From positions 98,956 to 162,955 of the forward strand of contig DF237075.1 of the NCBI GenBank assembly GCA_000708835.1: a stretch of DNA of 64,000 nucleotides, in the 5' to 3' direction. The notes beneath the pieces were generated by a model. The model was not told where the DNA came from. It saw only the letters and a list, made by a program, of their open reading frames with translations, and searched no databases. The position numbers were made by a program, and so were the translations under genes. Source of the DNA: Klebsormidium nitens (taxonomy: Eukaryota; Plantae; Klebsormidiophyceae). Positions 45,037 to 48,444 of this stretch are shown piece by piece (position 1 is the stretch's first letter; the number at the start of each line of letters is the position of its first letter).

Positions 45037-45229
45037 CTCCAGAGCTGGATGTCACCCTCTCCTCACCCCTCAGGACGATCCTCCGTCAGTGGTGCAACCT
45101 GGATGCGCAATCTCCATCTGCAAGAAACGCAGAAGGGGCATCTGATCGCATCTGGTCCCCCCCCACACAACATTTCCCGCATAAAGCTGTGGCTTCCAAA
45201 AAGAGCGTGTGGGGGATTGCAAAAAACAG

Positions 45230-45301
45230 TGAAGACTAGGTGACTCGAACACCTAACCTTCCGATCTGGAGTCGGATGCACTGCCATTGTGCTAAGTCTC
45301 C
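45230..45301 (-). tRNA. tRNA-Trp(CCA), no intron
   Basis: Minus strand GGAGACT-TAGCACAATGGCAGTGCA-TCCGA-CTCCAGA-TCGGA-AGGTT-AGGTG-TTCGAGT-CACCT-AGTCTTC-A folds into a cloverleaf. T6 terminator at 45221-45226 and a TATA-like tract about 30 nt upstream. Confidence 0.95.
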
Positions 45302-45505
45302 TAGAATCGCTCAGAAAGCGTGCAGGCTTATAGATATAAACCTGTAAAGAAGGAAGACAGCTTTGACAAGGAGGAAGGTGTGGCACAAATATCCGGAGCT
45401 CCCAGTCCCACTTCCAAGCTACACAAAATCTGTCATTGTCAAGTTGGGGTTCAATTTCCACTAAAAGAGGCGCCCTTGAGAGACAGGAGATCAGTTTTTG
45501 GTGGC

Positions 45506-47372
45506 ATGGCTCCGCAGGAGAACAATTTTGTTCGTGCTCTTGAGGCACTAGCGGCGGGGAAGCCGGTGGCGGTCCTCGACAGTGAAGCACGGGAGGGGGA
45601 GACAGACTTGTTCATTCCAGGGCAGTTTCTACAACCTAAAAACCTACGGTGGTTGCGGACACTGGCGGGGGGAGAGCTTTACATCAGTGTGGGGCAGGAG
45701 GTGGCGGCATTGTTTAAGCTGCCGTTCATCGGGCCGGCGTTGAAGGAAACGAGCTGGGATGTCTTGAAGCAAATGCAGAAAGAGAACGACGGAATGTGCC
45801 AGGGAAGGTGAGGGTGTGACGCTTCCAGGCTTGCCTCTATATTCTTTATATGGTGGCGCCAGGCGGAATGTTTGCCTTGGCCCCTCCTTAGGTTTCTGAA
45901 AGCAGAAATATGGTCACATAGAAGTTTCTGAGGTTTGCTGGTTTAGGTGCTCTTGATCAGCCAATGCTGCAACTTGGGATGCTAATAAGGTTGGTGGTCA
46001 TGTTCAGTTCTTAAGTGAGACACCTGACCTTGGGTGCTGGTAATGATCTGAGTTGTACTACTAACTCAGGATGACCTTGATTGCCATTCGCTTCTGTAGG
46101 AGACAACGTGACAGCAGAGTCAGTCAGCATTTGCCAGCTTACACAGCAGTATATTTTTGGCCGATTTGCAAAACGTACTTAAGCTGGTGGTTAGCATGTT
46201 GCAAAGCGATGGCACTGACACCAGACGGCAAGGGTCTACTACAAGCCTGAGGAATCTGACTAGAGTGTGGCGGGTGCCATCTTACCCAGGCCTTGACGAG
46301 AGAAGACAGGGGACACTTTCTCTTCTTCTCCTCGCACAACGCTCCATGATTTGAATTGTGGGGCTGCCGACATACATTCATGCACTTTGAAAGCCATGGT
46401 TTGATCCTGGTTTGCAGCACACATATAGCGCTGAGACATTGCTAAAGTCATGATTCTCTCATTTTGTATCTTTGTATCACCTTGGGGAACTGTTCACAGA
46501 GTACTCTCTTTCCTTTACAGCTGCAGCGTGAGCGTGAGCCTGGACCACCGCAGCACAGCCACAGGCGCCCCTGACGTGGAGCGCAGCCTGACCTGCCGGA
46601 GGCTGGCGGAGCTCTACCAAGAGTCGTCCAAGAAAGGCCTCACGCCCGACGAGGCGTGCGCGGAGCTAGGGCGGGAGTTCCACACACCGGGGCACGTCTT
46701 CCTCTGTCGAGAAAACGATCTGGGGCTGAAGCACCGGGCAGGTCACACGGAACTGTCAGTTGCGCTGGCCAGGGCGGCGGGGGTGACGCCAGTGATGGTG
46801 AGGGGCTGGGCCTTAATGATTGGGTTTTTTGAGTCTGTAAAGTCGTGTAAGCCTCCCCAGGCCTAAGAAGTCAAAAACTAGTCGAAATGTATCTCTTAGA
46901 TCATGGCATGTGGGGGTGGAAGCTGACAATTCAATGCGCCAAATGAAAGGAAGTGCACTTGTCCTCTGAAATAAGGGTCCTGCTGGGGAACAAAGGCAGT
47001 ACTTGCCTTTAGACCCCGCTCTACTTCTCGTTTCCTGCTTTTCCACTGGATCGCTTCGATTCTTTCCGGCAACCATGATGCACACACATGACAGTATCAG
47101 GAAGATCTTTTGTGCCTGCTCTTGCATACCCTCAACGCAGATGCACCTGTCAAGCTTCATCTTATGATGTCGGATGTCTCCATCTGCAGGTGGGCTGCGT
47201 TATGCTTTCAAACGAAGGGGACGATTATGGTGCCCTCCCGCCCCGGCTAGCAGAGGCCTGGGCAGTCAAGAACGGAGTGCCGTTCCTCACAGGAGAGCAA
47301 GTGCAGCAACACATTCTTTCAAAAGCAAGCAACGGGGTACACAACGGGGTCTCAAACGGAAACGCACACTGA
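45506..47372 (+). CDS. ribB: Stand-alone 3,4-dihydroxy-2-butanone 4-phosphate synthase (RibB)-fold protein, archaeal-type, about 253 aa
   Basis: Exons 45506-45807, 46521-46797 and 47190-47372. Motifs LDSEAREGETDL, LDHRSTATG..ER, FHTPGHV, RAGHTELSVALA, AWAVKNGVPFLTGEQV. No GTP cyclohydrolase II domain and no transit peptide. Confidence 0.85.
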
Positions 47373-48444
47373 AATCCTTGCAATATGGCGATACTGTCGA
47401 GGTGAGACTGATGGGGTGCACGAGCGGAAGTAACTTATTAGTCTTATGCGTAAAACTACTTTATTAGGCAATGAAAGGAGAGATTAAGGTGTATGTAGTG
47501 AGCTTCAAGGTGGACAGGTCTCAAGAAACTTTTTAAGGTGCGCAAAGTCTTCCGGCAGCAATCATGGATCACGCGCTTTGACAGTCTCCTGGCAGGGGAG
47601 TTGATTGATGCTCGATTGGAGTCCTTTTCTAAAGATCCTCGAAGGAACAGCTTCGTGTTTCAAGTGCAAAGGTCTTGGTCGGATCCATTTCGAAGGGGTT
47701 GAGTCCAAGGTCACCGTACGTTTCGAGCTAGCTGTGCAACGAGGGGAGTACCTTCAGCTGTTGCTGTAGAGTACAGACTTATGAAGAGACTCGTTCGAGG
47801 CTGGAATCACATGCCAGTGCAGTGTCCTAAAACGCATGTAGCTTTGCATTCATGTGTTACCATAGATGACCATTGGGTGCTTGCGTCACCGTTGGAATGT
47901 TAGATGTCATTCGCGGGGCAACCGTCACCCGGGGCGTTCCCCGGCCATGGTCCTTGAACTTAGGCTGATTATACGATAGTATAGGGTCGCCATGCATGCA
48001 TGAGTAGAATAGCGCCGGAAGGCCGGACGCGACTCCGGGCAATCAGCTGTTACTGCTGCGACTGCAAACTCTTTGTTGGCGCGCAAGCCTACTGACCGAA
48101 CCCTTTGGACCAACCATTCTGCATCTAGGTACGACCAGGATTGCAGCCTTGTATTATGATGATTCTTAAGGATCTTCATCATTACCAGCATCACGAGCGT
48201 CGCCGTCGGGATAAATTGAGTTGACCACGTCACGCATTTCAAGTTTGATTTATCGAGTCACCTCATTGTATTGCCTGTATATATGCATGGTTCAATATGA
48301 TGAATCAAGAGCTTGTCGACAAGACGCGATGGCCGCGCAGGCCCGGCCTTAGTGGATCAGAGTCACGTGCAATCGACGTATTCTGACGCGGCCAGGACTA
48401 GGGTTGCGTTCAGTGGTTCTGGCTGTCGTATTTCGGCAGACCAA

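What the first reader, a model, noticed from the sequence alone, without database searches (positions are those of the whole stretch)
45506..47372. Stand-alone, archaeal-looking RibB (DHBP synthase) homolog with altered catalytic residues
Seen: about 253 aa, no transit peptide, no GTP cyclohydrolase II half, three exons. Known: plant DHBP synthase is usually the plastid-targeted RibBA fusion. From my recollection of Methanocaldococcus RibB, the features DS-x2-REGETD, the QF after it, the KLPF..L insertion and the terminal AxKxxxxFLxGE look archaeal-type. REGETD, PGHV and GHTE are kept, but the GGLIC Cys position reads GGELY and the ICEMM Glu position reads GCVML. Both positions are catalytic in characterised RibB enzymes. 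Inference: a horizontally acquired, intron-domesticated, probably cytosolic RibB-fold protein that is a pseudo-enzyme or acts on a different sugar phosphate.
Basis: partly seen in the sequence, partly recalled or inferred. Interest (0 to 1): 0.7.

Follow-up and report, generated by a model that had tools for sequence, protein, structure and literature searches.

The report
Archaeal-type RibB relative, catalytic glutamate replaced
This green alga expresses a conserved gene that the green lineage took long ago from marine archaea: it keeps the fold and metal site of the riboflavin enzyme RibB but lacks the glutamate that normally starts the reaction, so it probably does something other than make the riboflavin precursor.

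Summary
At 45506-47372 (+) lies a three-exon gene for a 253-aa stand-alone RibB-fold protein. RNA-derived contigs from four studies confirm both splice junctions.

- **Closest structure:** archaeal M. jannaschii RibB.
- **Residues:** Cys55 reads Tyr and Glu185 reads Val. The metal and phosphate ligands are kept.
- **Not a local oddity:** the same residues are fixed in a family spanning chlorophytes, streptophyte algae, mosses, a liverwort and Selaginella.
- **Selection:** dN/dS against two Klebsormidium relatives is 0.04-0.07.
- **Origin:** the family nests (99/95 and 100/96 support) inside the RibB clade of Marine Group II archaea (Poseidoniales).
- **Cys55 is not diagnostic:** the archaeal genes sit in riboflavin operons and already carry Phe at position 55. 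Glu185 is Glu in 168 of 174 other RibB rows.
- **New glutamate:** position 53 is Glu in every family member and in no other RibB.
- **Prior work:** Yue et al. 2012 already listed the moss ortholog as a transfer from euryarchaeotes and filed it under riboflavin synthesis. The earlier timing, the Marine Group II source and the remodelled active site appear in no paper I found.

Function is untested. My best guess is a metal-dependent sugar-phosphate enzyme with changed chemistry. I did not search or fold the joined protein.

The parts
45506..45807 (+). Exon 1 (residues 1-100 plus two bases of codon 101). Holds the acidic loop REGETD (45590-45607), the new Glu57 (45674-45676, position 53 of M. 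jannaschii RibB) and Tyr59 (45680-45682, in place of Cys55).
45808..46520 (+). Intron 1, 713 nt, GT..AG, phase 2
   Evidence: Skipped by high-depth contigs in four runs; same position in L084 and L085
46521..46797 (+). Exon 2 (residues 101-193). Holds the family motif CSVS-x-SLDHR, His159 (46693-46695, = His147), Arg173, His176 (46744-46746, = metal ligand His164) and Thr177.
46798..47189 (+). Intron 2, 392 nt, GT..AG, phase 0
   Evidence: same position in L084 and L085
47190..47372 (+). Exon 3 (residues 194-253 plus TGA). VGCVML with Val197 (47199-47201) in place of the catalytic Glu185, then a low-complexity tail.
45464..45505 (+). Minimal 5' UTR seen in RNA-derived contigs. Some contigs run more than 500 nt further upstream.
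   Evidence: the X13 contig starts at 45464; in-frame stops upstream
47373..47700 (+). 3' UTR. It continues about 120-170 nt beyond the stretch I laid reads on.

Best explanation
This is a real, expressed nuclear gene of a Klebsormidium-type alga. It belongs to a conserved green-lineage family that descends from the RibB (DHBP synthase) of Marine Group II (Poseidoniales) archaea, through one gene transfer at or before the origin of Viridiplantae. On the stem of the eukaryotic clade the active site was rebuilt. In M. jannaschii numbering, Glu185, which from memory of Steinbacher et al. 2003 is the base that removes the C3 proton of ribulose 5-phosphate, became Val. Leu53 became Glu, Phe/Cys55 became Tyr, Tyr95 became Cys (green members only; Val in the dinoflagellate-type subclade), Ser99 became Cys, Asn106 became Asp and Arg143 became His. 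Kept were the metal ligands (Glu26, His164), the acidic loop (Asp21, Glu28, Asp30), His147 and three residues that I recall from memory as the phosphate binders (Arg25, Arg161, Thr165). The new set of residues then stayed fixed under strong purifying selection. The most likely mechanism (inferred, not shown) is that the protein still binds Mg2+ and a pentulose or pentose phosphate as a homodimer, but catalyses a changed or shortened reaction rather than ordinary DHBP formation, with Glu53 as the likely new acid/base. It works alongside the canonical plastid RibBA, not in its place. It looks cytosolic in streptophytes and probably plastid-targeted in chlorophytes.
For: Gene and expression. Family membership and fold: PF00926. 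The AF2 model of the moss ortholog has pLDDT 96.3 and matches 1pvy/1pvw at TM 0.87/0.94, rmsd 1.8. Conservation: 60 rows carry the same residues, from prasinophytes to Selaginella. dN/dS is 0.070 and 0.042. Origin: in the careful ML tree the eukaryote clade has 100/100 support. That clade plus MGII sequences P0124 and P0045 and the Rhodelphis sequence has 99/95. That clade plus all Phe55-type archaeal RibB has 100/96. All nest within archaeal RibB, with bacterial RibBA as outgroup. All 80 loci kept from the genome scan with P0124 are MGII or other Thermoplasmatota/euryarchaeal MAGs by record title, and 72 of them have ribB followed by ribL-like, riboflavin synthase and lumazine synthase genes. 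Residue pattern: position 185 is Glu in 168 of 174 other rows and Val in 47 of 47 family rows. Position 53 is Glu in 49 of 49 family rows and in none of the others. The metal ligands and the remembered phosphate-binding residues are invariant. Orthologs score 97-145 bits against the TIGR00506 equivalog cut-off of 177.45, while a canonical archaeal RibB scores 249.6. P. patens and Selaginella also have canonical RIBA genes (PMC3509567).
Against: No activity data exist. The role of Glu185 rests on my memory of Steinbacher et al. 2003 and Fischer et al. 2002, which the library does not hold. Here it is backed only by conservation counts. The tools return no model coordinates, so I could not test whether Glu53 reaches the substrate. 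All the active-site changes sit on one branch, so their co-occurrence counts as one evolutionary event, not as independent covariation. I did not check whether this genome has a canonical RibBA. Targeting is judged only from N-terminal length and composition. The absence from seed plants rests on named hits only.
Confidence: 0.5

Rival explanations
1. It is still a DHBP synthase. The catalytic glutamate has moved from position 185 to position 53 on another strand (53 lies two residues from active-site residue 55; whether the two strands are neighbours was not tested), so the family is a second, non-plastid source of DHBP.
For: Glu53 appears only where Glu185 is lost. Positions 53 and 55 are two apart on one predicted strand, so both should face the active site. 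All metal ligands and the residues recalled as phosphate binders are retained. The archaeal donors are operon-encoded RibB.
Against: About a dozen further fixed changes around the active site (Tyr95, Asp96, Ser99, Asn106, Arg143 and others) go beyond a simple swap. The scores fall below NCBI's equivalog cut-off. Species with this gene already have canonical RIBA. The gene has been lost in several lineages that still need riboflavin, judging by the named hits.
Confidence: 0.25
2. It is a non-catalytic pseudo-enzyme: a metal and sugar-phosphate binding protein used as a sensor, regulator or partner of another enzyme.
For: The one second-shell residue I recall as indispensable (Glu185) is gone. 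The binding residues are kept. There is strong constraint with no known pathway role.
Against: Pseudo-enzymes usually lose constraint on some catalytic-site residues. Here the whole remodelled site, including a newly fixed Glu, Tyr and Cys, is invariant over about a billion years. Copies that really decay look different: the Sphagnum paralogs read KEAKTN, PSH and QNGHIE.
Confidence: 0.2
3. It is a recent transfer into this alga, or archaeal contamination of the assembly.
For: The best solved structure and the nearest Atlas clusters are archaeal.
Against: Two spliceosomal introns are removed in RNA-derived contigs. G+C content matches the flanks. A nuclear tRNA gene and eukaryotic genes lie nearby. 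Orthologs occur across Viridiplantae and form one clade.
Confidence: 0.01

Closest known systems
[quoted passage not shown]
   Same: Full-length homolog (profile E 1e-42) with the same fold (TM 0.87/0.94, rmsd 1.8 for the moss ortholog). It shares the archaeal-type insertions, the acidic loop REGETD, His147, Arg161, His164 and Thr165.
   Different: Glu185 is Val, Cys55 is Tyr, Leu53 is Glu, Tyr95 is Cys, Ser99 is Cys, Asn106 is Asp and Arg143 is His. It is a eukaryotic nuclear gene with introns. Sequence identity is 31%.
RibB of Marine Group II archaea (Ca. Poseidoniales / Thalassarchaeaceae), e.g. P0124 and loci L001-L080
   Same: Nearest relatives in the tree (99/95). They share Gly183 (xGxxML) and the loss of Cys55. 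About 38-43% identical to the moss ortholog P0010.
   Different: The archaeal proteins keep Glu185, Leu53 and Tyr95 and have Phe55. Their genes lie in ribB-ribL-ribE-ribH operons, so they are ordinary riboflavin enzymes.
Physcomitrium patens 'ribB', listed as a transfer from Euryarchaeotes (Yue et al. 2012, Nat Commun, Table 1)
   Same: Ortholog (P0010) with the same family residues. It has the same stand-alone architecture and no Arabidopsis homolog.
   Different: The moss gene is intronless. [quoted passage not shown] Here the family also occurs in chlorophytes and streptophyte algae, and it lacks the catalytic Glu.
Plant plastid RIBA (RibBA fusion: DHBP synthase plus GTP cyclohydrolase II)
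   Same: The same Pfam domain, PF00926. RIBA3 members are a precedent for DHBPS domains that lost essential residues (PMC3509567).
   Different: RIBA is of bacterial type, fused to GTP cyclohydrolase II and plastid-targeted. It relates to this family only at about 1e-15 to 1e-20, and bacterial RibBA forms the outgroup in the tree.

Membership tests
DHBP_synthase domain family (Pfam PF00926) | Sequence match above Pfam's gathering score (26.4 bits) | tested here: met
   Exon 1 scores 47.7 bits and exon 2 scores 70.4 bits
DHBP_synthase domain family (Pfam PF00926) | RibB alpha+beta fold | tested here: met
   AF2 model of ortholog P0010 (pLDDT 96.3) against 1pvy: TM 0.87/0.94, rmsd 1.8. The window protein itself was not folded, because the joined sequence has no reference.
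Functional RibB (NCBIfam TIGR00506 equivalog; EC 4.1.99.12) | Score at or above the curated equivalog cut-off (177.45 bits) | tested here: not met
   Orthologs P0010 144.3, P0012 144.5, P0018 133.3 and P0046 97.3 bits. MGII P0124 scores 175.2 and canonical archaeal P0054 scores 249.6. The window's exons score 47.1 and 73.3 separately.
Functional RibB (EC 4.1.99.12) | Metal ligands Glu26 and His164, with the acidic loop | tested here: met
   REGETD at 45590-45607 and His176 at 46744-46746. Both are invariant in the family.
Functional RibB (EC 4.1.99.12) | Glu185, the base at C3 of ribulose 5-phosphate (role recalled from Steinbacher et al. 2003) | tested here: not met
   Val197 in the window. 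Val in 47 of 47 family rows, against Glu in 168 of 174 other RibB rows.
Functional RibB (EC 4.1.99.12) | Cys55 | tested here: not met
   Tyr59 in the window. This residue is not defining: 18 rows, including operon-encoded MGII RibB, have Phe.
Functional RibB (EC 4.1.99.12) | Forms DHBP and formate from ribulose 5-phosphate | not testable with these tools
   Needs an enzyme assay or ribB complementation
Horizontally acquired archaeal gene in Viridiplantae | Eukaryote clade nested within a donor clade with strong support, and integrated in a nuclear genome | tested here: met
   Trees. Introns and spliced transcripts. Donor identity.

The most novel reading that the evidence does not exclude
The green lineage turned an archaeal RibB into a new metal-dependent sugar-phosphate enzyme by moving its catalytic glutamate and swapping neighbouring residues. 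The enzyme would then act on ribulose 5-phosphate or a related pentose phosphate and give a product other than DHBP. It might stop at the 1-deoxy-2,3-diketo intermediate (phospho-DPD-like), or epimerise or isomerise the sugar. It would be plastid-located in chlorophytes and cytosolic in streptophytes, and it was lost in seed plants.
Probability: 0.4. Interest if true: 0.75.

Novelty: new variant of a known kind. Interest (0 to 1): 0.55.

Why it matters
Gene transfers from archaea to eukaryotes are rare. This one can be tied to a specific, ecologically plausible donor: planktonic Marine Group II archaea that share the water column with algae. The evidence moves a published 'land-plant' transfer back to the root of the green lineage. 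It also shows that databases and the 2012 paper annotate the protein as a riboflavin enzyme although it lacks the one glutamate found in 168 of 174 other RibB rows compared here. The family is small, soluble, strongly conserved and models with high confidence. That makes it a tractable case for studying how an enzyme with unusual rearrangement chemistry is repurposed, and it may mark an unknown step of pentose-phosphate metabolism in algae and non-seed plants.

Tried and rejected
- **Joined protein left out.** I searched the exons by reference and used stored orthologs for the profile, tree and model. To reach full-length relatives, the word search used the natural ORF 45320-45808 with region 63-162, which is exon 1. 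The dN/dS count pooled codons from the three exon pieces and left out the split codon.
- **Residue roles not confirmed from papers.** The two M. jannaschii papers are not held. The open papers I read give no residue-level role for Cys55 or Glu185, and one text search returned nothing.
- **No model coordinates.** I looked in /data and found none, so the distance from Glu53 to the substrate could not be measured.
- **Shared introns rejected.** The moss gene is intronless and the pedinophyte intron lies elsewhere.
- **Fe-S or zinc site rejected.** Of the conserved cysteines, only the one at position 99 is kept in the dinoflagellate subclade.
- **Rhodelphis origin unresolved.** The AU test does not reject a single eukaryote clade (p = 0.305).
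- **Earlier scan notes** hold nothing on a canonical RibBA in this genome.
- **An unrelated paper.** Dorrell et al. 2017 mention DHBP synthase, but they mean the ochrophyte RibBA.

Full report
**1. The observation**

The stretch holds a three-exon gene on the + strand: exon 1 at 45506-45807, exon 2 at 46521-46797 and exon 3 at 47190-47372, ending in TGA. Both introns are GT..AG, and the product is 253 aa.

I laid Logan contigs from four runs of four different studies on 45300-47700. Each run has one high-depth contig, 100% identical to the window, that skips exactly 713 nt and 392 nt at these junctions. Only low-depth pieces cover the introns. The run types are guesses, but spliced contigs show that the gene is transcribed and spliced as modelled.

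In-frame stops at 45293-45295 and 45302-45304 lie upstream of the ATG, inside the region those contigs cover. There is therefore no hidden N-terminal extension.

Pfam PF00926 (DHBP_synthase) hits exon 1 at 1.6e-12 and exon 2 at 1.8e-19. The window has no GTP cyclohydrolase II part and no second copy of the gene. G+C content matches the flanks. A nuclear tRNA-Trp gene sits 205 bp upstream. Earlier notes of this scan take the genome for Klebsormidium.

**2. Archaeal type and changed residues**

Each exon's best solved structure is M. jannaschii RibB (1pvw, 1pvy, 1snn). A profile of eleven full-length orthologs matches it end to end at E 1e-42. Bacterial and fungal RibB reach only about 1e-15 to 1e-20.

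That alignment places AGGELYISV on AGGLICTAL and PVMVGCVML on PITTICEMM. So Cys55 becomes Tyr (Tyr59, 45680-45682) and Glu185 becomes Val (Val197, 47199-47201). The acidic loop REGETD, PGH (His147) and R-x-GHTE (Arg161, His164, Thr165) are all kept.

An AlphaFold2 model of the moss ortholog P0010 (69-sequence alignment, pLDDT 96.3) superposes on 1pvy at TM 0.87/0.94 and rmsd 1.8. Bacterial RibB reach a TM of about 0.73.

**3. A conserved family, not a local oddity**

Using the natural ORF 45320-45808 with the exon-1 region as query, the word search found full-length proteins of 232-275 aa. All carry GGELY and VGCVML. Their junction-spanning motifs (MCQG-S-CSV and PVM-VGCVML) independently confirm the splice model.

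A profile search and cluster look-ups extended the family to these taxa:
- mosses: Physcomitrium, Ceratodon, Sphagnum
- a liverwort: Calypogeia
- a lycophyte: Selaginella
- Zygnematophyceae: Mesotaenium, Spirogloea, Closterium
- chlorophytes: Chromochloris, Scenedesmus, Flechtneria, Tetraselmis, a pedinophyte, Pyramimonas, Pseudoscourfieldia, Prasinococcus
- a dinoflagellate with a green plastid: strain TGD

No seed plant appears among the named hits. Yue et al. 2012 likewise report no Arabidopsis homolog.

Two related Klebsormidium-like contigs (L084, L085) have the same exons and splice sites. Pooled Nei-Gojobori dN/dS against the window is 0.070 (dS 0.52) and 0.042 (dS 1.6) over 252 codons. 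The gene is under strong purifying selection.

**4. Origin**

The exhaustive profile search (2839 hits at E up to 0.001) ranks a set of archaeal proteins directly after the eukaryotic family. These read GGL[LIV]F and xG[AC]EML, so Cys55 is Phe and Glu185 is kept. The best of them, P0124, belongs to a cluster named from a Euryarchaeota MAG.

A scan of GTDB species genomes returned 80 loci. By record title, about half are named Candidatus Poseidoniales or Thalassarchaeaceae (Marine Group II). The rest are labelled only Methanobacteriota, Euryarchaeota or Thermoplasmatota archaeon. In 72 of the 80, ribB is followed directly by three genes: a ribL-like cytidylyltransferase, riboflavin synthase and lumazine synthase. 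Of the other eight loci, the two I inspected individually are cut off by contig ends. These archaeal proteins are therefore genuine riboflavin enzymes that lack Cys55.

I built a maximum-likelihood tree (IQ-TREE, LG+C20+F+G4 PMSF, 75 rows, bacterial RibBA as outgroup). Support values, as ultrafast bootstrap / SH-aLRT, are:
- the eukaryotic family: 100/100, on a long stem of 1.14 changes per site
- the family plus the MGII sequences P0124 and P0045 and the Rhodelphis sequence: 99/95
- the family plus all Phe55-type archaeal RibB: 100/96

All of this nests inside archaeal RibB. The bootstrap had not fully settled, but two quick trees with different sampling agree.

The dinoflagellate sequences nest inside the green clade. 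This fits inheritance from the green endosymbiont.

Rhodelphis marinus has an unmodified Phe55/Glu185 copy with a 73-aa N-terminal extension. An AU test does not reject one eukaryote clade that includes it (p = 0.305). One acquisition in an archaeplastid ancestor is therefore possible but not shown.

The moss ortholog is intronless, and a pedinophyte has its intron elsewhere. The two Klebsormidium introns are thus lineage-specific gains.

**5. What is already known**

Yue et al. 2012 (PMC3493653, Table 1) list the P. patens ribB as the single family acquired from archaea. They name the donor as 'Euryarchaeotes', the category as 'riboflavin biosynthesis' and record no Arabidopsis locus.

In the held library I found no paper on any of the following:
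- the catalytic-residue changes
- the presence of the family in chlorophytes and streptophyte algae
- a Marine Group II source

**6. Function**

Twelve positions are fixed in the green members of the family and differ from both archaeal groups. In M. jannaschii numbering they are L53E, C/F55Y, P94M, Y95C, S99C, F101V, N106D, I114A, T115P, D118E, R143H and E185V. A thirteenth, D96Q, differs clearly only from the Phe55-type group. Two of them, Y95C and T115P, are not shared by the dinoflagellate-type subclade, which has Val and Thr there.

Still invariant or nearly so are Asp21, Arg25, Glu26, Glu28, Asp30, His147, Arg161, His164, Thr165 and Glu166.

Across all stored homologs:

| Position (M. 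jannaschii) | This family | Other RibB rows |
|---|---|---|
| 185 | Val in 47 of 47 | Glu in 168 of 174; three of the six exceptions (P0147, P0257, P0258) look like one-column misalignments |
| 53 | Glu in 49 of 49 | never Glu |
| 55 | Tyr in 48 of 49 | Cys 138, Phe 18, other 11 |

From memory of Steinbacher et al. 2003, Glu185 contacts the C3 hydrogen of ribulose 5-phosphate and is the only second-shell residue that cannot be replaced. I could not re-read that paper here.

Full-length orthologs score 97-145 bits against NCBI's RibB equivalog cut-off of 177.45. A canonical archaeal RibB scores 249.6. P. patens and Selaginella also have canonical RIBA genes.

Taken together, the metal and sugar-phosphate binding site has been kept for roughly a billion years. 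The initiating base has been removed, and a new carboxylate, a phenol and thiols have been fixed around the site.

I read this as neofunctionalisation of a metal-dependent sugar-phosphate enzyme (about 0.5). The rivals are:
- a DHBP synthase with a relocated base (about 0.25)
- a ligand-binding pseudo-enzyme (about 0.2)

Copies that are really decaying look different. The Sphagnum paralogs have lost the acidic loop and PGH.

**7. Location**

The window protein starts only four residues before the M. jannaschii N-terminus. Streptophyte members have extensions of at most 28 residues with almost no basic residues (one Arg or Lys at most). Many chlorophyte members have 45-106 residue extensions that are rich in Ser/Thr/Ala/Arg and poor in acidic residues.

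This is a composition argument only, because no targeting predictor was available. It suggests a plastid location in chlorophytes and a cytosolic one in streptophytes.

**8. Limits**

- I did not submit the joined spliced protein to any search or fold tool. Family-level conclusions rest on stored orthologs and per-exon searches.
- No model coordinates were available.
- No enzymology exists for this family.
- I did not check whether this genome carries a canonical RibBA.

Noticed in passing
window 45229-45301 (-): A tRNA-Trp(CCA) gene lies 205 bp upstream of the RibB-like start codon on the opposite strand. RNA-derived contigs of two runs (X1, X3) extend more than 500 nt upstream of 45300, across it.
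   Followed up: partly
P0039, P0047, P0052, P0055 (Sphagnum): Sphagnum copies of the family have degenerate motifs (KEAKTN for REGETD, PSH for PGH, QNGHIE/QNGHTK for RxGHTE). They look like decaying or strongly diverged paralogs.
   Followed up: no
P0035: A protein annotated from the bdelloid rotifer Rotaria sp. Silwood2 nests inside the chlorophyte clade and reads RQGPTE, so the metal ligand His164 is replaced by Pro. It is either algal contamination or a further transfer into a rotifer.
   Followed up: no
P0130 (Rhodelphis marinus): This non-photosynthetic relative of red algae has an unmodified MGII-type RibB (Phe55, Glu185) with a 73-aa N-terminal extension. A single origin with the green family is neither shown nor rejected.
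   Followed up: partly
P0042-P0044, P0046 (Dinoflagellata sp. TGD): The green-plastid dinoflagellate subclade has a long N-terminal extension with a hydrophobic segment and an insertion of about 20 residues after the VGTVM strand. It keeps only one of the green-clade cysteines.
   Followed up: no
L001 2307-5972: In one Marine Group II MAG, the riboflavin operon is preceded by a 1221-aa protein that combines an animal-haem-peroxidase domain with FG-GAP and ASPIC/UnbV repeats.
   Followed up: no
L081 3001-3717; L083 3001-4133: The P. patens ortholog is intronless. The pedinophyte gene has one intron at a position not shared with Klebsormidium.
   Followed up: yes
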